Assembly: GCA_965655095.1 (NCBI GenBank)
Contig: OZ296652.1
Coordinates: 49,414,001-49,478,000 of the forward strand
Direction: 5' to 3'
DNA: 64,000 nt
DNA from: Haplodiscus bocki
Lineage: Eukaryota
Positions 35,947-45,650 of this stretch are shown in pieces. Position 1 is the stretch's first letter, and each line of letters opens with the position of its first letter. Made by a program: the position numbers and the translations under genes. The notes under the pieces were generated by a model. It did no database searches. It was given only the letters and a program-made list of their open reading frames with translations, and was not told the origin of the DNA.

Positions 35947-37071
35947 TAATGAGACAAAGCGGTTGACACGTAAGAAGAGAAACTTCTTTTGCTGTGTAAT
36001 ATTCAATTCGTTGTTGATTTTCTAAGCACATCAACCACAATACGGATCAAATCCGAGAGGATATAATTTGCGAGGGAAATCGGAGAATTGTTTTCCTTAA
36101 TCCTTGGCGATCTATGTTTTTTTTATCAATCCCCTTATCAAACATTGGCTAGAAGCTCTCTGTTACGGAAATTTTGACTTTTTTGCCTCTTTATACTCAA
36201 TGTTGAATCTAGTAGTGGCACTTCAAGACATTTTTATTTTCCTAAGGAAAACTTTCCAAACAAATCTCATGGATTTCCGAAGTTCCACAAGAAACCATAA
36301 TGCAATTTTTGTTCGGTTTCCAAAAACTCAAATGACCACATTTCTTCAAATTTTTCAAATTTCTAAATTAAATCTACATTGTGGAAATTTTATATTACAG
36401 CCCGAAAAACACGCGAGAAAGGTATGATTTATAAAGGATTTTAAATTTTTTTGCCGAAACTGACTAAAAAGGTTGCTTGCATGAACTTGAATCATACTTT
36501 TGGAAAGTAAAAGTCATAAGCATTCATTATAGTGACACGGGATGCGCAAGACTCCATGATCATGTCTAAGACGTGAAGTTTCAATAACTGTTTTATATTA
36601 CGTATGAATCATGTTAAAAGTTGTAGTGCACTTAACCAATTGGCTACACTTGAATGCATTTGAACGCTTCAGATTTTGCTTTCTGTAGCCCCACTTCACA
36701 AACTAGCAGTCGTCATTTTTGAACAAGTGTTGAGTCGTGATTTTTTCCTTCATCTTTCTTTAATGTTTATTTCCATTTTTGTTTTTCTCTGGGAATTCAT
36801 TGTTTTCATGGGAGCCTCTTTCGTTTTCCCGGAAGATTTTCAGACAAACCTTGGAAATATTGTTTGACCAATTTGAAAAACGAAGGAAATTTTTTTAAGA
36901 AGAAACCAAACTGCTCATCCATGAAAATCAATTTGGAACAGTTTCGGGGAAATTTTTGAGAACAAGTTTTTGTAGCCTGCTAATATTTTAATGTCGTGGA
37001 AATATTTTATAATATCATTCCAATACCAACTAGAAAATGGCACTCGGAGAGCGCAGATCCCGCGAAAGCCC

Positions 37072-37216
37072 NNNNNNNNNNNNNNNNNNNNNNNNNNNNN
37101 NNNNNNNNNNNNNNNNNNNNNNNNNNNNNNNNNNNNNNNNNNNNNNNNNNNNNNNNNNNNNNNNNNNNNNNNNNNNNNNNNNNNNNNNNNNNNNNNNNNN
37201 NNNNNNNNNNNNNNNN
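37072..37216. other. Assembly gap (145 N)
   Basis: Run of N directly abutting the tRNA-like array. Confidence 1.
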
Positions 37217-37219
37217 CCC

Positions 37220-37275
37220 AACTCTCGACCCTCGCGTTTATAGCACAATGCTCTTACCGACTGAGTTATAGTGCC
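37220..37275 (-). pseudogene. tRNA-derived cassette copy 1 (3' part lost in the gap); anticodon loop CT-ATA-AA
   Basis: Reverse complement GGCACTATAACTCAGTCGGTAAGAGCATTGTGCTATAAACGCGAGGGTCGAGAGTT. Confidence 0.7.
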
Positions 37276-37385
37276 GTAAGCAACTGATTACTATTATCAG
37301 ATTAGTATTATCAGATTACTATTATCAGATTACTATTATCAGATTACTATTATCAGATTACTATTATCAGATTAACAAAAAATTT

Positions 37386-37460
37386 TGGCCACTCAGAGGT
37401 TCGAACTCTCGATCCTCGCGTTTTTAGCACAATGCTCTTGACCGACTGAGTTATAGTGCC
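37386..37460 (-). pseudogene. tRNA-derived cassette copy 2 (tRNA-Ile(AAT)-like body; anticodon loop CT-AAA-AA)
   Basis: Reverse complement GGCACTATAACTCAGTCGGTCAAGAGCATTGTGCTAAAAACGCGAGGATCGAGAGTTCGAACCTCTGAGTGGCCA. It has an A-box-like motif, B box GTTCGAACC and anticodon stem TTGTG/CGCGA, followed by AAA and T6. The acceptor, D and T stems contain mismatches. Confidence 0.8.
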
Positions 37461-37556
37461 GTAAGCAACTGATTACTATTATCAGATTAGTATTATCAGA
37501 TTACTATTATCAGATTACTATTATCAGATTACTATTATCAGATTAACAAAAAATTT

Positions 37557-37630
37557 TGGCCACTCAGAGGTTCGAACTCTCGATCCTCGCGTTTTTAGCA
37601 CAATGCTCTTACCGACTGAGTTATAGGCCC
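37557..37630 (-). pseudogene. tRNA-derived cassette copy 3 (anticodon loop CT-AAA-AA)
   Basis: Near-identical to copy 2 except for a 5' GGGCCTA and a 1-nt shorter D loop; also followed by T6. Confidence 0.8.
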
Positions 37631-37868
37631 GTACACGTCTGATTACTCTTATCAGATTACTATTATCAGATTACTATTATCCAGGATCTGATTGAAATCT
37701 TGATCCAAAAATCCGACCAGTAGTTCATGAGAAACAGTTATCCGGATCTCAGATCCGGATTTCAATCCGGATCACGCCCAACTTTGAACTCGGTCTTCCT
37801 ATGATCATTACCTCCCTACTCACCAAATTTCATCAAAATCCGACCAGTCGTTTTTGAGAAATCCTGCT

Positions 37869-37920
37869 AACAAACAAACAAACAAACAAACAAACAAACA
37901 AACAAACAAACAGACAGACA
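37869..37920. repeat. (AAAC)n(AGAC)n microsatellite within the HINE 3' region
   Basis: Seen directly. Confidence 0.95.
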
Positions 37921-39064
37921 CACGAAGGTGATTCCAATATCCCGCTTTTCGCAGGATAATAAAAGTAAGATCAATATAATATTAAACATTCAATGATGCA
38001 ATCTGTCACTCAATAATGTTCAAAGGCTCAAAAATGTCGACTTTGTCTTTTTTGCTTCTTTTGGGCATCTTAACTTTTTTATGTTGCCCTACGCCTGAAA
38101 TAATAAAGCATGGCTTTGTAAGTATGTATCTAACACTACTTAGTCGCCTCTGTGACCGACATTTTGGAAATATTTTGAAGATAATGATAAGTTTTAATGA
38201 AATCTTGAAATCTCATTTAATTTATATTGCAAATATACCCTGGTTGAGGTCTCAGAGACATTCGGCGTTGTTCAATCCTGATTCAGAAATTTGTTTCAGT
38301 TCTGATTTGCTCAGAGACTTCAACCCGGGTAATTTACTTCCTGTTTGCAAGAAATCTTTACCCAAATTTTTCTAAGCGGCTCCTAAATTGAAACTTTCTG
38401 AAATTTTTGGAATGCCGCTTGAAAAACCGTATTTTTAGCACACAAGAGAACAAACCAGAGCGTCAAACAAAAGTTTCGCTAGTTTGAACTGCAGCTTGTA
38501 CAAATAAATTTAAAGTTGAGGACTTTTAAACAGTAGGGAGGACCTTCGTGACATTTTGGTTGACGCATAGAACAAAAATTTCGAACCCTTTGCCTAATAG
38601 TCAAAATTCAGTCAGATTGATGAAACCATTTTGAATAAATGAACTGGTTTTAGCCGTAGCCCGCTTGCAACAATAAATGTTATCAACCATTTTTTCAAAA
38701 ACTAAGTTTGTTTTTGCAGGTGAAGTGAAATGTGTGACTGTCTAAAAACCAAACTCTCTAAAGTTGTGGCAGATTGAAGATTGTAGCATATGAATTGTAA
38801 ATTTTTGTTTAAATTAGTACTCATTGTACTCATTCACTTGAAACGAGGAAATTGAAAACGTTACAGTGGTCTCATAACCTCAGAACTAACAAAATGTCAC
38901 TCGAAATTCTGCTAGATGAAATATAAGGCGTGGAATTGTGGCACGTATGCGCTGTATTGTATCTGTTACGCGCTGACTAAAACGAATCTTATCAACTTTG
39001 AATCATCAACATGCTGCATTCTTCATTAAAAATTTCTATTCTATCAAAAATTTTAAATAGAAGG

Positions 39065-39585
39065 ATGAAATTCTCAAAAAATCAATGGTTAATTGGCTTG
39101 TCGTTATTAGTTATACTAGCAACTTCTTTAAAGGTCTTTCCGATTGGGCTGTTCTCGCAGTATCAAAATGGCAATTCAGATACAAAAGAGATCGAGCGTC
39201 TCGACATTTTGAGGCCACCGCAAACAGAGACAAAACCCACAATGAAAATGGAGAAAATGCAGGAAGAATCCAGAAGTTCTGAAGCTACAAAACGAATCCT
39301 TTCTTTCGCAAAGTTTGGTGATGTTACTTTTGAGTACCCGGTTTATTTGGAATACTTAACCAAAATGGAAAATAAGGGGTGTGCAAACATGAATCCAGAC
39401 GAGCCCTACCTGGTGACAGGTTTTACTGATTGTGTTCTTTTTTGTTTGGGAAGAAACTTCTTGAGAATCTTCGAGCTAAAAATTGTAGAGCATGATGGGA
39501 AAACAAAGTGTTCGTGTGGTCCTGGCTTGCAGAATGAGAAAAATAATACGTTTAACCATTCAGAATGTGAAATGTCTAATTTTAG
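39065..39585 (+). CDS. WSCD-family sulfotransferase, exon 1 (signal anchor, stem, first WSC-like domain)
   Basis: MKFSKNQWLIGLSLLVILATSLKVF type II anchor; cysteine pattern GC..C...C...CSC...C. Phase-2 donor TTTAG|GTTGGT at 39586. Confidence 0.8.
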
Positions 39586-41608
39586 GTTGGTTTTTCACTA
39601 TTGTTTTCATGCAAATGTACGATATCCCAGAATCACTATAATACTCCTGTTCATGGAAAACCGTTCTTGATCATGGATTTATCATGGACTTGGAAAATTT
39701 GACCAGGCAACAAAAGTCTCCGTGGGTCTGTCATGTGACGTTGGGATAATGTTGCCTCAACTCCAGACTGCTTCCAAAAGATTATAATCTGGAATTCGAT
39801 GTTCTTGTACCTCCTGACTCGACAGTTTTCATCATAAAAAAGAAAATTCAACACCAGAATCTGGAATTTTGTTCCTAGCATTAGACTTATCAGATACCGA
39901 AGATGTCACAATTTTTAATTACTGCTTTTTCGACAGATTAAAACTCAGTTTTCTCCAGTTTCTTAAAGTCGGTATCTTTCATCGAAACTCAGTCGAGGCT
40001 TTTTTTCTCTGTGCAAAAGCTAAGTCATAAAACGTTTTCCACGTTTTTCCTGTGAATAGGCAATTGGATTGGCCAAAACTATCAAAAACGTCAAGTTTTG
40101 ATGGTCATTTTCTCTGTTCAAACTCAAAATTTGGAAAAAGTTTTCCTACAAAACCTGTATTGACAGCTGCTACGTTTTTGAGAATTTTTTTAAAGACACT
40201 ATTTGATTTTCGCTGCATTGGAACCCTGATAAAGCGAGATTGGTAAAAATGCGATAAATATCGATTTTTGTTGACGATCAATTTCTTTTTTTATCTCCAG
40301 AGGTATCAGCTTGAGTTCCTTCATCTAGGCCTTAAGCGACAGTTTTAGGCATGTTAAAAATATTCCGAACTATTTTGTCTGTTTGTTGTTTTGGCTGAAG
40401 TTGTGATAGGTGGAAAGTCTAGAAACTGTCCTGCATTTTATTTTTTATCGATTTTCCTATTCAATTTTCTAGAAAAATTTACGGCTAAATTTCCTCTCTC
40501 AAGGTCCAATAGACCTTGTTCTACATGTGGAAAGTATTTGAGCTCCAATATTTTAAATCATCTTGTTCCTTCGGAACTCTGTTAGGTGATGAGAATCAAA
40601 AACTGCGACCTGGAGCAACATTTTTTCGATCAGTTCCACTCCATAATTATCAGCCAGGTTTGTTGCCTCAATGAATCTACCGATGGCTCATTTCCGTAGA
40701 AAGTCTTTTGGTAAAGTGTTCTTTTGTTTTGTTCGTTGCTCCAGAACACTGATAAGCTAAAACATCTGAAAACCACTGTTTTTAGGAAAACCGCAAAATA
40801 ATTCATGCATCTTTTCAAAACTTTGTGAAGTTGTTCCAAGCAGTATTTTCTTAGACGGTGTAGACTGAAAGTATCGTAGCGTTGCTGCAGTTCCTGTTCC
40901 GTATACCTCCAATAAAATCATCTAAACAATGACGCTACATCACACAGATTAAAGAAATGGGAAAAGTTGTGACTACTTCGTTCGTGTACACTAACATTTC
41001 TGGATAAAATTGCAGAGACAATTAAAAATCTGATGAGTTAGCTTGTTTGTGTTTCCTTCCTTCATTTTTTGGTTATATATGTTACTAAGCCTAAGTTCAC
41101 ACTAAAGGCGAACGCGCAGCAATACGAGATACCCCATGTTCACTATCTAACTTGATAAAAGCTAGCTTCTCGAGGACAACCAGTCTCTACTTGGAAAAGT
41201 TTTAAGCTTTAAAAATTATTTTTACGGTTATAAACTACGATATAAAAAATCTAGATTTTAACCAATGGCACGTCTTCTTTGTGTCATCTTCAAATTAAAT
41301 ATTTTCTTCCAAAAAGAACATCATCTGTTAAAATATCATCTCAAAACACCTATGTATTACAGTCGTCAAAAAAGTTTTTTTGCGAAAAATGTCTGAATGA
41401 GAAACGAAAAGCTCACATATTCCAAAACATGATCCAAGACTACTATTTCTGATGATGCTAAGACAATTATATCATCATTTGATATGAAAAATCAACATTC
41501 CGAAAAAGCAAACCGCTGACTTTGAAAAGTCGAGTTTGTTTTTTACCGAATAATCGCTTTGAGCAGACTCTCAAAATTTCTTTTCATTTTCTTTTTCCAA
41601 TTGTTTAG

Positions 41609-41878
41609 ACACATAAATTTACAACCTCTGCTCCCCAAAAACCAAGACGTTGAACCAGAAATGGACTATTTTAGTTGTGTTGATCCAAAATTGATGACGT
41701 TGGTCAAAACTATCAAAGTGAGGCTGCTTACTAAAGAAATGTGTCATGAGTATTGTGACATCCAATCGTTCCCAGTGGCAGTTTATGAAAGACTAGATCG
41801 CTCTTCTGGTCTCTATTCCTGTTCGTGTTCACCCACTTTGATGGAAATTTTCCGTGCTGGCACAAGTTGCCTCAACCA
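41609..41878 (+). CDS. WSCD-family sulfotransferase, exon 2 (second WSC-like domain)
   Basis: Pyrimidine-rich acceptor ttgtttag| in phase 2 matches exon 1. YFSCV...LTKEMCHEYCDIQSFPVAV...CSCS...C is WSC-like. The most parsimonious donor is CA|GTGACA at 41879 (phase 2), just before the in-frame TGA; the 3' boundary is less certain. Confidence 0.75.
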
Positions 41879-42547
41879 GTGACAAACCACTTACATTTTA
41901 GGTCTTTTATTTGATTTATTAAATAATCAATTAAATCACTACAATGTCAATCGAGCTGCTTTTTTCTGAAATGCTTCCAAATTCAAATTGGCTCAGAGAG
42001 ACTTCATATAAACATATGTATTTTTCTGAAGACTTGAATTTAAAGTTTAGCTTCAACAGCCTTAAAAATGGGTTTTGAAACATTTACGCTTTCGTTGCAA
42101 AAAGGGACTTATCCTATTATTTGTTCATGAAAATAACTGCTTCACAGTCGGGTTCGTTCTTTATGTTGAAAAAATAAGTATTTCATACCATCAGTGAAAA
42201 CACTGTCTGTATTTTAAGATCTTCCGAGAATAAATTCGTTGTTCTAACTTAATCAATAGATATGCGTAACTTTTTAAAATCACCTGAACAGGCCAATGTA
42301 AAATGAATGAACTCAAAATCCCGCCAGACTGACCAAAGAAATGTCGCCAAGTCTCAAAGAAAATGAATAGTTCTAAGATTTTAGCCCAAAATGGTAAAAT
42401 TTCATTTTAATACATCCAAGCAGCAGGTACAGCCTTTAGTTCAAGCCGTAACCGTCTCAAATATTGTAACAGCTTTGGTAAATGATACATTTATTCCGCG
42501 AAAAACTGGTATCATGAGCACATTGACATTGGCTTGTCACTTTGAAG

Positions 42548-42867
42548 AGGCGATTCTGAAACTTCCGCCCAACAAATTCTGACAAGTTTTGCTATTCAAC
42601 AATGTGCGCGGGCCAGACTCTTGGATGAACGTGACCCTCCATTCCCCATAGTGGGTCTGCTAACTGTCCCGGGATCAGGTAACACCTGGACCCGACTGCT
42701 TATCCAGCATCTGACTGGCAGTCTAACTGGATCCATTTATCGTGATTTGGAAAAGGTCCAGAGTGGTTTGTATGGAGAGAGTGTTAAATGGACAGCCTGG
42801 CCTCAGAATTATTCGACAAGTTTTGTGATCAAAACCCACAATTGGGAACTTTTCGAACGACAAGCTG
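42548..42867 (+). CDS. WSCD-family sulfotransferase, exon 3 (5'-PAPS-binding loop)
   Basis: QQCARARLL...VGLLTVPGSGNTWTRLLIQHLTGSLTGSIYRD...GLYGE...FVIKTH matches the WSCD consensus SFPGxGNTWxRxLIExxTGxxTGSxY. Acceptor ctttgaag| is phase 2; donor G|GTTAGT is phase 1. Confidence 0.88.
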
Positions 42868-43485
42868 GTTAGTTCTGTTCATCCAGTCGAGATCACAAAA
42901 TTATTTTTCAGGCCAACTTTTGAATACTAAACTCTACTGGTATCGTACTTCCCACTTTTAACTACAACAAATCCATCGGAGGGTCACTATCAGCAAAAAA
43001 TGATGCTTAAATGAGTTTTTAATTATCAAGTCCCATAAGAACGAACTGCCAACCTAAATTGGCGCTGACTGTTACAGGTAATTAACTATAACTATAAGGA
43101 AGAGCTTTTAAAATTTTCAGACGTTTCCCAGGGTGCAGATGCTCTAACTGATGTTAAAGCTCATCCGCTGAAGCTCAATAAGAAATCTCGGCACATAAAG
43201 AAAAAGTAAACTGCATGCCAAAATGACTGACCATTTTGAGCGAAACTTGTGTTAAATTTAGCTGACTAAAATTAACACCATGCATGTAAATGACTGCCCC
43301 AGTTAGTGTGCTTAAATGAGGAATCATACTTACTGATCCTGGGTTTTAGTTACCATTCAGAAAATCGTCATTTGTATGTTAAAAACTGTCAAACATTGTC
43401 CCTTATGGCTAATTATCACAAATCGCCATGATTTTGTCCAATTAGGATATTTTTCTAGCATACTGTGTGTTTTTCGAAGCATTAA

Positions 43486-44539
43486 CCCTGAAAAGTCAAG
43501 TAATCGTTTCCCATGAAACTCTACACTTTCCTATGCAATATAATGATATATTGGGGCTAAAAAGGACCATGACACTCCTTTTGTCGATGCCGTATTGACT
43601 TTAAACTGCACATAATGGCATCAGGAACTAATTTTAGCAACCAATAGAGAACAAGGAGAAAAGACATAAATTGTGATGATGGTTTTACAAAACTCCGGTT
43701 GTATCCAAAACTATCAGCGATATTGTACCCACTGTTGTACCACAGCAACAATTTTTGATTGATTACTTTATTTCTTGAACTTTTACTATAAATTCAACTC
43801 GACTTTCTAATTTCTTCACCATTTTCCTTACTTGAAAAATTCATTGAAGTGGGAAAATAACTATTCAGAAAAATACATCCTATAAGTGAACCTAATTCGA
43901 AATACTTGAAGAATTCCATCGACATTGAAGCGTCTATTCCCTCTCCCCTATCCGTCGAGCATCCCTCCGCAGAACCAAAGTTCAAACTTTTAATAAAACA
44001 TTAGAATATGACACCGATTCTTAAACTCTCAAGTAATCCTTTGATATTTTGAGAAGTTTTAATTTTTTGAAGAAAGCTCCATTTTACAAAACTACAAGGG
44101 TACAATTTTAAGAAGAATTCTCATCCCTAGTATCGAAAAAGTTGGTAGAGGGCATTTTGTTGTTCTTAAAAATTTCCGTTCCCAAAGATTATTGGCATAC
44201 CAAAGGGGTGGAGCTACAACAATTTTCTTTCCTAAAACGTTCCGTCTAGCAATGCCGCAAAACCCATTGGTTTTTACGTAGTATGAGACAACGCCGATTT
44301 TTTAAAAAATGAGTAAAAAATCGAAGATTGGGTTTTTTATAGGGTCATTAAAAAGAAAAGTCATGTTTTTACTTGGTTTACCGATCAATTTTGGGGAATA
44401 AAACTTCAGAAAACTGACATTTTTTCCCCATTTCTTTTTTTTAATAACAGTGATGAAAACTATATAATATGAAACAGAACTTTTCATCTGGTAAAAAGAA
44501 CAAAATGGAATCAAACAGCTTGATATTTTTAAATAAGGG
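43486..44539. mobile_element. Possible piggyBac-type MITE in intron 3
   Basis: TTAA|CCCT ... AGGG|TTAA termini; only 4 bp of TIR beyond the TTAA. Confidence 0.3.
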
Positions 44540-45137
44540 TTAACAGTAAATAAAACCGTAGTCGATGTTCGAGCATTCCAACATGATTGACTACTCGACT
44601 TTGCATTCTACTCCCATTCGATTGTTGAAATAAAAGAAACACATTAGCTGATTTAGCGAAATGTGTCCCAAAAATCTCAAAAACTGGAAACAAAAGATAC
44701 GCTTCCATGTTACGACTGAGAACTGCAGTTGGACAGTCCTATGAGGGCTTCAAAGAAACACGACTGGCTCTAGGCAGGTTTTTTGGGGAAACGATTTGTT
44801 TGAATAATATTAATAAAATGCGTTTCTTGTATGTTCTTTACAATCACACCGAATCGATAATCGTAAAGGCAATTGATTTATCGATCAGTGATCGATTGAA
44901 TGGAAAAAACTAAATGCCACACACCTTAATTTTTCAATTGCGAATTTTTTGGGTTTTTGCGCAAAGTTTTCCCGTATGTTCTCCATAATCGTTAACGTTA
45001 TCAATTTATCCATCTGTAATCGATTAAAGCAAAAAACTGAATATCACGCACCCTCATTTTTTTATTGAGAACTTTTCGAGTTGCTGTGGAAATGTTGCAA
45101 CAGAAACTCTTGATATTTTCCAACAATTAAATTTTAG

Positions 45138-45650
45138 AAGCCTTGAACGACACAAAACGCTTCCCGCGTAGAGCAATAAATGTGATCCGAGACCCAGTCA
45201 AAAGTGCAATATCCGAGTTTCATCGCGTCAATAGCAACCAGTACGCATCAGTGAGTGAGGAAAATCTGGTGGGAAAAAATATGACAACTTTAGCCAGAAA
45301 ACCACCAAGTCATGCTAACATGTTAATCAACCATGCAAAGCTTATCAGTGAAAAGGGTCTTGACGCTCTGTACGTGAGTTACGAGGACATGATGAACAAC
45401 CTCTTGCCGCAACTTTTTCGAATCCAACACTTTTTGGGCTTCGAAGACGCTCAGTCTGTTGAGCGAACATTCTGTACCTACCTGAGGAAGAAAGAAGGCA
45501 ATCAAACAACTGCCTAAAACAGATTTCATTCCGAAAGTTCTCGGTGAGATGGATCACGAAATCATGAATCGAAGATTGAAAAAACTATCGACACTTTTGC
45601 AAACGGCTCATTCCCATTTCTTAAGAATGCCATCGTACATTCAAAAATGA
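45138..45650 (+). CDS. WSCD-family sulfotransferase, last exon (3'-PAPS-binding region), with apparent frameshift at ~45502
   Basis: Acceptor attttag| is phase 1. Motifs AINVIRDPVKSAISEFHR, VSYED, RIQHFLG and ERTFC...KEGN. As assembled the frame stops at 45515-45517, but the +1 frame continues to TGA at 45648-45650. Confidence 0.8.

What the first reader, a model, noticed from the sequence alone, without database searches (positions are those of the whole stretch)
37029..37960. Rolling-circle (HINE) element carrying a tandem array of tRNA-derived Pol III cassettes with variable minisatellite spacers
Seen: at least three ~170-185 bp units, each a tRNA-like 74-75-mer on the minus strand. In copies 2 and 3 a T6 run follows immediately 3'. 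On the 5' side lie an 11-bp linker and 6, 5 and ~3 copies of ATTACTATTATCAG. The array sits inside an element with intact HINE termini and runs into an assembly gap, so it may be longer. The units are nearly identical, unlike the decayed neighbours. Established: Helentrons/HINEs capture host DNA and breed internal tandem repeats; tRNA A/B boxes recruit TFIIIC/Pol III; tRNA-STR arrays are known in Entamoeba. Inference: a rolling-circle vehicle spreading multi-copy Pol III units (small-RNA source or insulator) ~1.1 kb upstream of a host gene.
Basis: partly seen in the sequence, partly recalled or inferred. Interest (0 to 1): 0.75.

Follow-up and report, generated by a model that had tools for sequence, protein, structure and literature searches.

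The report
Rolling-circle transposon carrying tRNA-derived repeats
This is one copy of a roughly thousand-copy non-coding rolling-circle transposon (a Helentron-type HINE) whose internal tandem repeat was built from the host's isoleucine tRNA gene plus its terminator. The element type is well known. I found no published case of this tRNA cargo, and nothing shows that the copies here still work.

Summary
Window 37028-37963 is one non-coding element. After a 145-N assembly gap it contains three 171-185-bp units. Each unit is a tRNA-like 74-75-mer on the minus strand. Units 2 and 3 have a T6 run 4 nt downstream. Upstream lie 6.4, 5.4 and 2.9 copies of a 14-bp minisatellite.

The ends show most HINE/Helentron hallmarks: 13-14-nt subterminal inverted repeats, a 5' hairpin, a GTCT/GTTT microsatellite, T-rich boundaries and no target-site duplication. 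By HINE convention the element lies on the minus strand, the same strand as the tRNA-like units.

Genome-wide there are about 1,000 3' ends, 1,461 5' ends and at least 1,488 tRNA-like units. The unit consensus is about 90% identical to this genome's own tRNA-Ile(AAU) genes, with the anticodon changed to AAA.

The same ends also carry unrelated cores, so the tRNA array is one of several interchangeable cargoes. The window's units score below the Rfam tRNA threshold. Stems decay without compensation across the family. No RNA data were available, so Pol III activity or an insulator role remains untested.

The gap could not be bridged. An autonomous partner was located only by coordinates.

The scan had already noted this family on other DNA of this genome. 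Verdict: a new variant of a known kind.

The parts
37028..37071 (-). 3' end module of the element (RF in HINE convention). It ends ...CTAGTT at 37028. It holds a weak palindrome at 37040-37054 and the 3' subterminal inverted repeat at 37057-37069. It is cut by the assembly gap.
   Evidence: The boundary is sharp at 37028 in 21 aligned copies. The 37-mer occurs 974 times genome-wide with up to 2 mismatches, and the 17-mer core 1,022 times exactly. The palindrome is not significant (z -0.12).
37072..37216 (.). Assembly gap of 145 N (length only estimated). It was not filled.
   Evidence: No contig of runs X1 or X3 bridges it.
37217..37275 (-). Unit 1: a tRNA-like sequence truncated by the gap. 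Its anticodon loop is the ATA variant.
   Evidence: (family D2), and the unit listing.
37286..37374 (.). 14-bp minisatellite, 6.4 copies.
   Evidence: 97% matches, score 171.
37377..37382 (-). T6 run (Pol III terminator-like), 4 nt after unit 2.
   Evidence: In the family sample, 171 of 183 units keep a run of at least 4 T within 30 nt downstream.
37386..37460 (-). Unit 2: a tRNA-like 75-mer with anticodon loop CTAAAAA. It has a 1-nt deletion in the 5' acceptor strand and a G10 to A change in the A box.
   Evidence: Rfam RF00005 gives 24.7 bits, below the cut-off of 29.
37471..37545 (.). 14-bp minisatellite, 5.4 copies.
37548..37553 (-). T6 run, 4 nt after unit 3.
37557..37629 (-). Unit 3: a tRNA-like 73-74-mer. 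This is the position-specific variant that always sits next to the 187-nt block.
   Evidence: Rfam gives 26.9 bits. It is 98-99% identical to the equivalent unit of six other loci.
37641..37681 (.). 14-bp minisatellite, 2.9 copies.
37682..37868 (-). Conserved 187-nt block between the microsatellite and the array. It is shared by all core variants of the family.
   Evidence: A search with 37682-37965, which holds this block, gave 42 scored hits out of 1,087 candidates at 86-98% identity. It is present in tRNA-type and non-tRNA-type copies alike.
37869..37920 (-). Microsatellite, (GTCT)(GTTT)n on the minus strand, typical of a HINE 5' flank.
   Evidence: period 4, 13 copies. The HINE description is in PMC7492417.
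37921..37963 (-). 5' end module (LF). The T-rich terminus lies near 37960-37963. The 5' subterminal inverted repeat is at 37944-37957. Its complementary inverted repeat at 37939-37945 forms an 8-bp hairpin.
   Evidence: Boundary alignment. Hairpin z -2.74. The 37-mer occurs 1,461 times genome-wide.

Best explanation
Window 37028-37963 is one copy of a young, high-copy, non-autonomous Helentron-type rolling-circle transposon (a HINE).

Read on the minus strand, its parts are:
- a T-rich 5' terminus;
- a 5' subterminal inverted repeat that folds back on an adjacent complementary repeat;
- a GTCT/GTTT microsatellite;
- a conserved 187-nt block;
- a central tandem array;
- a 3' subterminal inverted repeat;
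- an end reading ...CTAGTT.

The central repeat was built from a host tRNA-Ile(AAU) gene together with its downstream T-run terminator, plus a 14-bp minisatellite on the tRNA's 5' side. In most copies the anticodon has since changed to AAA.

The array travels as cargo when the element is mobilised in trans by a Rep/helicase transposase. That step is inferred. The array also changes length locally by slippage or unequal exchange, in 14-bp and whole-unit steps.

The copy in this window is ordinary selfish DNA. Its tRNA look-alikes are decayed and are very unlikely to serve as tRNAs. Each unit still has a B box identical to that of units of the genome's tRNA-Ile array. Each of units 2 and 3 also has a T6 run. 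Residual TFIIIC binding or Pol III transcription is therefore possible but unshown.
For: Anatomy and boundaries:
- 21 copies share a sharp 3' boundary and about 17 share the 5' boundary.
- 12 complete copies have no target-site duplication. The base before the element is T in 7 of 11, and the end is always CTAGTT.
- The subterminal inverted repeats match at 13 of 14 positions.
- The 5' hairpin has z -2.74.
- This layout matches published HINE anatomy: subTIR, complementary IR and GTCY-type microsatellite in the 5' flank, central repeats, then a 3' subTIR and palindrome, with T-rich insertion sites (PMC4067079; PMC7492417).

Copy number:
- 974 to 1,022 3' ends, 1,461 5' ends and 1,488 exact 25-mers of the AAA anticodon arm, with 0 control hits.

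tRNA origin:
- This genome's own tRNA-Ile(AAU) genes were found by pattern search and ARAGORN.
- The consensus of 183 unique units is about 90% identical to them over 74 nt, with the A and B boxes intact in the consensus.
- A few HINE-borne units still have the anticodon AAT.

The array is cargo:
- Position-specific unit variants are shared between loci at 98-99%.
- Spacing between units differs in 14-bp steps of 54, 68, 82, 96 and 110 nt.

No constraint on tRNA folding:
- Stem cells show 518 broken pairs against 8 double compensatory changes. Stems diverge by 8.2% and loops by 4.1%.
- Units elsewhere in the family score at most 48.6 bits, against about 66 bits for genuine genes. The window's units score 24.7 and 26.9 bits.
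Against: - No autonomous Helentron with the same ends was read. I have only a coordinate coincidence: a 5' end of this family lies 7.8 kb upstream, on the same strand, of an intact 2,203-codon Rep-domain open frame at C1:147.37 Mb. The sequence could not be fetched.
- The 3' palindrome is weak.
- No empty site was available, so insertion between two T's without target modification is inferred from flanks only.
- The assembly gap means contiguity of the 3' end with the array is unproven at this locus.
- 'No function' rests on decay patterns and absence of data, not on a test.
Confidence: 0.85

Rival explanations
1. The tRNA-like units are live Pol III units. They would bind TFIIIC through the B box and be transcribed into short RNAs that end at the T6 run. 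The family would then seed small-RNA sources or chromatin boundaries across the genome, including upstream of the neighbouring sulfotransferase-family gene.
For: - The B box is identical to that of units of the genome's tRNA-Ile array, and the family consensus keeps an intact A box.
- 171 of 183 units keep a run of at least 4 T downstream.
- About 73 units in 18 loci still pass the Rfam tRNA threshold.
- Loops, which hold the A and B boxes, diverge less (4.1%) than stems (8.2%) or flanks (about 12%).
Against: - No RNA run holds the stretch, so there is no expression evidence at all.
- The window's units have G10 to A in the A box and score below threshold.
- The lower loop divergence is confounded by subfamily structure and CpG content.
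- About half of the sampled copies with the same ends carry unrelated cores, so the tRNA cargo is not needed for the element to spread.
Confidence: 0.15
2. It is a cluster of tRNA-derived SINE retro-copies, or a local tandem duplication of a host tRNA gene cluster, that merely sits between HINE-like sequences.
For: The units are tRNA-derived. The genome does hold a genuine giant tandem tRNA-Ile array on the same chromosome.
Against: - The units have no LINE-like tail, no A-tail and no duplications of their own.
- They are followed by a terminator T run, as a gene is, not as a retro-copy would be.
- Every sampled locus that held the units together with an element end showed the same end modules in one orientation.
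- The genuine array has a 379-bp unit with unrelated spacers.
Confidence: 0.02
3. The juxtaposition at this locus is an assembly artefact. The 3' end module left of the gap and the array right of it would then belong to different molecules or copies.
For: A 145-N gap lies exactly between them. Short-read contigs collapse at the repeat and none bridges it.
Against: Order, strand and approximate spacing match complete copies elsewhere. Unique flanks on both sides run into the respective end modules in two samples (records 1, 8, 17, 24).
Confidence: 0.08

Closest known systems
HINEs: non-autonomous Helentrons such as Drosophila DINE-1, mite HINE-Mo and oyster Cg_HINE (PMC4067079; PMC7492417)
   Same: Both are non-coding. 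Both have 11-15-nt subterminal inverted repeats, a complementary inverted repeat beside the 5' one, a GTCY-type microsatellite in the 5' flank, satellite-like central tandem repeats of about 150-200 bp, T-rich boundaries and no target-site duplication. Both reach high copy number and combine ends and cores modularly.
   Different: Here the central repeat is recognisably a host tRNA gene with its terminator. The Cg_HINE paper never mentions tRNA, and I found no paper describing such cargo. The 3' palindrome is weak. No autonomous partner was read.
Arabidopsis chromosome 5 tRNA-Cys cluster overlapping annotated Helitrons (PMC10701932)
   Same: Tandem tRNA genes lie in the same polarity as rolling-circle element annotations. 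The authors discuss tRNA capture and tandem amplification.
   Different: That is a single locus, and Helitron-prediction tools gave no reliable call. [quoted passage not shown] Here the cargo sits between defined ends in hundreds of dispersed copies.
tRNA-derived SINEs
   Same: Both are dispersed, high-copy tRNA-derived sequences with internal A and B boxes.
   Different: SINEs move through RNA. They have a body and a LINE-related or A-rich tail, and they create target duplications. These units are tandem, keep a gene-style terminator, lack tails and duplications, and move as DNA cargo.
Entamoeba tRNA array units with short tandem repeats (cited from general knowledge, not tested here)
   Same: tRNA genes are interleaved with short tandem repeats in tandem arrays.
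   Different: Those are the organism's functional tRNA genes in non-mobile arrays. These are decayed look-alikes inside a transposon.

Membership tests
HINE (non-autonomous Helentron) | Short and non-coding | tested here: met
   The element spans about 937 nt including the gap. The ORF list from 37900 rightwards shows none inside the element; the rest, read by eye, is repeats and shows no coding frame. Other complete copies are 0.5-2.2 kb.
HINE (non-autonomous Helentron) | 11-15-nt subterminal inverted repeats, a few nt from the 5' end and tens of nt from the 3' end | tested here: met
   The 5' repeat lies at 37944-37957 and the 3' repeat at 37057-37069. They match at 13 of 14 positions with one indel. 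They start about 6 nt from the 5' end and about 30 nt from the 3' end.
HINE (non-autonomous Helentron) | Inverted repeat complementary to the 5' subTIR (a 5' hairpin) | tested here: met
   8-bp stem, -6.1 kcal/mol, z -2.74.
HINE (non-autonomous Helentron) | Microsatellite in the 5' flank followed by central tandem repeats | tested here: met
   The microsatellite is at 37869-37920 and the array at 37217-37681.
HINE (non-autonomous Helentron) | Palindrome 8-35 nt from the 3' end | tested here: inconclusive
   A 6-bp imperfect palindrome lies at 37040-37054, 12 nt from the end. The fold is no better than shuffles (z -0.12).
HINE (non-autonomous Helentron) | Insertion in T-rich or TT sites without target-site duplication | tested here: inconclusive
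   12 complete copies show no duplication and have T-rich boundaries. No empty site could be examined.
HINE (non-autonomous Helentron) | An autonomous Helentron in the same genome sharing the ends | tested here: inconclusive
   A 5' end at C1:147361956(+) lies 7.8 kb upstream of an intact 2,203-codon Rep open frame at C1:147369799(+). The sequence could not be fetched. The Rep frames that recur at about 17-kb intervals on C1 have no exact end of this family nearby.
Canonical Helitron | 5' TC and 3' CTRR ends, with insertion between A and T | tested here: not met
   The 3' end does contain CTAG, but it is followed by TT. The 5' end is (A)TTATCC, not TC. The flanks are not A and T.
Functional tRNA gene | A cloverleaf that scores above curated thresholds | tested here: not met
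   The window's units score 26.9 and 24.7 bits against a cut-off of 29, and ARAGORN finds none. Genuine tRNA-Ile genes score 65.6-66.8 bits.
Functional tRNA gene | Internal A and B boxes and a downstream T run | tested here: inconclusive
   The B box and the T6 run are present. The A box has G10 to A in the window's units.
Functional tRNA gene | Transcription and processing | not testable with these tools
   No RNA run holds the stretch.
tRNA-derived SINE | tRNA head plus body and tail, flanked by target duplications, dispersed singly | tested here: not met
   The units are tandem, lack tails, and in every sampled locus that also held an element end sit beside the same HINE end modules.

The most novel reading that the evidence does not exclude
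A DNA rolling-circle transposon, rather than a retrotransposed SINE, has scattered well over a thousand tRNA-Ile-derived Pol III promoter and terminator units across an animal genome (probably a reef cnidarian). A fraction of them would still be bound by TFIIIC or transcribed. They would then act as boundary elements or small-RNA sources near genes such as the sulfotransferase-family gene beside this copy. The tRNA cargo might also help the element itself, for example by keeping its chromatin open.
Probability: 0.2. Interest if true: 0.75.

Novelty: new variant of a known kind. Interest (0 to 1): 0.5.

Why it matters
HINEs are already known to breed and spread satellite-like repeats. Here the origin of such a repeat can be traced to a specific host gene, tRNA-Ile(AAU), including its terminator.

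This would be a clear, multi-hundred-copy case of a non-coding RNA gene captured and amplified by a rolling-circle element. A 2023 paper still treated that as unreported.

It also gives a DNA-level route, independent of SINE retrotransposition, for dispersing Pol III control elements. Finally, it is a practical warning for tRNA annotation: about 73 of these units in just 18 loci pass the Rfam tRNA threshold.

Tried and rejected
1. Bridging the gap with public runs. Only short contigs were available and none spans it.
2. Expression. No RNA run holds the stretch.
3. Fetching candidate autonomous elements. A 10-kb tandem repeat that holds an end module (L049) turned out to be a copy without tRNA units and without a long ORF.
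4. Looking for the partner through alternative cores. The 795-nt core is itself a family with at least 222 candidate copies, and it gave only full-length hits.
5. A clean head-to-tail junction to define the exact ends. The one candidate (L062) is a deletion junction.
6. Flank homology between the HINE unit and genuine tRNA-Ile genes. None was found beyond the T run, so the donor locus is unknown.
7. Two scans of metagenome contigs with unit 25-mers were blank.
8. Literature searches for tRNA-derived HINE or Helitron cargo found nothing direct.
9. SINE and host tRNA-cluster readings were rejected on anatomy.

Tool outputs incidentally showed family-level letters next to the end module in other copies. 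I did not use them to fill the gap.
Full report
What is there.

The window belongs to a 1.5-Gb eukaryotic genome, at contig C5:49,414,001-49,478,000. Between 37028 and about 37963 lies a non-coding element interrupted by a 145-N assembly gap at 37072-37216.

To the right of the gap, Tandem Repeats Finder reports a 171-bp period (37300-37681, 94% matches, score 692). It also reports three 14-bp minisatellite blocks of 6.4, 5.4 and 2.9 copies, and a 4-bp microsatellite at 37869-37920.

On the minus strand each unit holds a tRNA-like 74-75-mer. Rfam's tRNA model aligns full length at 37557-37629 (26.9 bits) and 37386-37460 (24.7 bits), both under the gathering score of 29. ARAGORN calls nothing. 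A T6 run begins 4 nt after the discriminator base of units 2 and 3. Unit 1 is cut by the gap.

These are look-alikes rather than callable tRNA genes, and only two units are complete.

The gap.

I tested continuity as far as the data allow. Contigs of two samples of the same organism run from unique upstream sequence into the element and stop at 37053/54. Others resume at 37930/37969 and run on into unique downstream sequence. Nothing bridges the gap.

Order, strand and spacing are those of complete copies elsewhere, where the end module lies 42-110 nt from the nearest unit. Contiguity is therefore likely but unproven.

It is a family, and the array is part of it.

- The tRNA-like unit has 79 scored hits out of 555 candidates.
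- The stretch 37682-37965, which holds the 187-nt block, the microsatellite and the 5' end module, has 42 scored hits out of 1,087 candidates at 86-98% identity.
- Whole-genome pattern counts, with 0 control hits each, are: 1,488 exact copies of the 25-mer anticodon arm; 974 copies of the 3'-end 37-mer with up to 2 mismatches; 1,022 exact copies of its 17-mer core; and 1,461 copies of the 5'-end 37-mer.

Annotating 60-odd loci shows one architecture. On the window's plus strand it reads: end module L, about 50 nt, [tRNA-like unit + 14-mer spacer] repeated n times, the 187-nt block, the microsatellite, end module E.

Compound forms with internal copies of E are common. That explains why 5' ends outnumber 3' ends.

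Unit-to-unit spacing varies in steps of 14 nt: 54, 68, 82, 96 and 110. The window's unit 3 is 98-99% identical to the unit occupying the same position, next to the 187-nt block, in six other loci. Arrays are therefore inherited with the element rather than grown afresh at each site.

Classification.

Published HINE anatomy has these parts: a 5' subterminal inverted repeat with a complementary inverted repeat beside it, a GTCY-type microsatellite, a variable segment, central tandem repeats, a 3' subterminal inverted repeat and a palindrome. Boundaries are T-rich, insertion is at TT, and there is no target duplication (PMC4067079; PMC7492417).

Read on the minus strand, the element fits this:

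- The subterminal repeats (37944-37957 and 37057-37069) match at 13 of 14 positions.
- The 5' hairpin is significant (z -2.74).
- The microsatellite is (GTCT)(GTTT)n.
- 12 complete copies show no target duplication, a T before the element in 7 of 11, and an invariant ...CTAGTT end.

Two features are weak or missing. The 3' palindrome is no better than shuffles (z -0.12). I also could not read an autonomous partner.

The genome does hold 147 Rep-domain matches, many within open frames of 2,200-2,780 codons. One intact 2,203-codon frame, at C1:147369799(+), lies 7.8 kb downstream of an exact 5' end of this family on the same strand. I estimate about 0.07 such coincidences by chance on that contig. 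The sequence could not be fetched.

The Rep frames that recur at about 17-kb intervals on C1 have no exact end of this family nearby.

Canonical Helitron ends (5' TC, 3' CTRR, insertion between A and T) are not met.

Origin of the repeat.

A pattern built from the unit, with the anticodon set to AAT, found this genome's real tRNA-Ile(AAU) genes. One is a solo gene on C1. The rest form a tandem array on C5:79.53-79.62+ Mb, with 241 hits on one strand spaced at about 379 bp or multiples of it. These score 65.6-66.8 bits.

The consensus of 183 unique HINE-borne units is about 90% identical to them over 74 nt. Its A and B boxes are intact and its anticodon is AAA. A few units still read AAT. Outside the tRNA, only the T run is shared. 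What was captured is therefore a gene with its terminator, at the DNA level, and the donor locus cannot be named.

Are the units constrained or active?

Across the 183 units, stem cells show 518 broken pairs, 94 one-sided changes and 8 double changes. Stems diverge by 8.2% and loops by 4.1%. There is no selection for a cloverleaf, and an AAA-anticodon tRNA would be harmful if it were charged.

On the other side:

- 171 of 183 units keep a run of at least 4 T.
- The B box is identical to that of units of the genome's tRNA-Ile array.
- About 73 units in 18 loci pass Rfam's threshold, up to 48.6 bits.

The window's own units are among the more decayed. They carry G10 to A in the A box, and one has a deletion in the acceptor strand. 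No RNA run holds the stretch. Pol III transcription or TFIIIC binding is therefore a reasonable but untested possibility.

The tRNA array is optional cargo.

Of 25 further loci retrieved by the 5' end alone, 11 carry tRNA-like units. The other 14 carry other cores of about 400, 545 or 795 nt, or 495-nt arrays. Those cores share at most short stretches with one another: 193 nt in one pair, 37 nt in another. The 795-nt core alone has at least 222 candidate copies at 95-96%.

As a lower bound, 225 of 1,022 3' ends have an exact B-box 8-mer 60-90 nt upstream. The element's ends move whatever lies between them.

Mechanism, with what is shown and what is inferred.

Shown:
- the architecture and the boundaries without target duplication;
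- the copy number;
- the tRNA-Ile origin;
- inheritance of arrays with the element;
- 14-bp and unit-step length variation;
- decay of the stems.

Inferred:
- mobilisation in trans by a Helentron-type Rep/helicase through a single-stranded, rolling-circle intermediate that recognises the 5' hairpin and the 3' end;
- a single ancestral capture of the tRNA gene;
- slippage or unequal exchange as the source of length variation.

Context.

Pieces of the family at 90-98% identity, covering a unit plus the 187-nt block, occur in a coral metagenome run and in another organism's run. Other small-share holders are coral and reef metagenomes. The host is probably a reef cnidarian, but this rests on run labels only.

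Downstream on the plus strand lies a sulfotransferase-domain exon at 45143-45517.

Novelty.

HINEs carrying satellite-like repeats are well described. In the held literature I found no HINE or Helitron whose cargo is a tRNA gene. [quoted passage not shown] A blank in an open-access library is not proof of absence.

Earlier notes of this scan describe the same family on other DNA of this genome and reach the same reading. I reached the tRNA-Ile origin independently before reading them. Their claim of an intact longer copy with the same ends I could support only by coordinates.

Noticed in passing
G000:C5:79,527,000-79,625,000 (loci L039-L048), about 30 Mb from the window: A giant tandem array of tRNA-Ile(AAU) genes, with 241 pattern hits on one strand spaced at about 379 bp or multiples of it. 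Many units carry mutated anticodons (ATT, AAG, AAC) or a second degenerate tRNA-like stretch in the spacer. Several tRNA-type HINE copies cluster 100-200 kb further on, at 79.72-79.80 Mb.
   Followed up: partly
G000:C3:133.75-134.31 Mb, C9:18.6-19.0 and 1.75-1.83 Mb, C1:134.8-135.0 Mb, C23: Clusters of Rep-domain open frames of 2,300-2,780 codons recur every 15-17 kb (16.9 kb where measured). They look like tandem arrays of large rolling-circle elements. On C1 they lack exact ends of the HINE family studied here.
   Followed up: partly
G000:C1:147,361,956 (+) and C1:147,369,799-147,370,407 (+): An exact 5' end of the HINE family lies 7.8 kb upstream of an intact 2,203-codon Rep-domain open frame on the same strand. 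This is a candidate autonomous partner. It was not read.
   Followed up: no
Loci L053, L059-L065, L068-L070, L073-L075: The same element ends enclose cores of about 400, 545 and 795 nt, or 495-nt arrays, instead of tRNA units. These cores share at most short stretches with one another. The 795-nt core is itself a family with at least 222 candidate copies.
   Followed up: partly
window 38182-38352: A short stretch in the otherwise single-copy downstream flank reaches a summed contig depth about 40-600 times that of its neighbours. It is another, unidentified dispersed repeat.
   Followed up: no
window 38016-38120 and 39011-45517 (+): An ATG followed by a signal-peptide-like stretch and a GT splice-like site lies about 60 nt past the element. 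Further downstream are cysteine-rich ORF pieces and a sulfotransferase-domain exon (45143-45517). The gene model is unresolved.
   Followed up: partly
G000:C1:14,078,193 / 14,088,664 / 14,099,134: A 10.47-kb segment containing one tRNA-less copy of the element is repeated at least three times in tandem. This is a segmental tandem duplication.
   Followed up: partly
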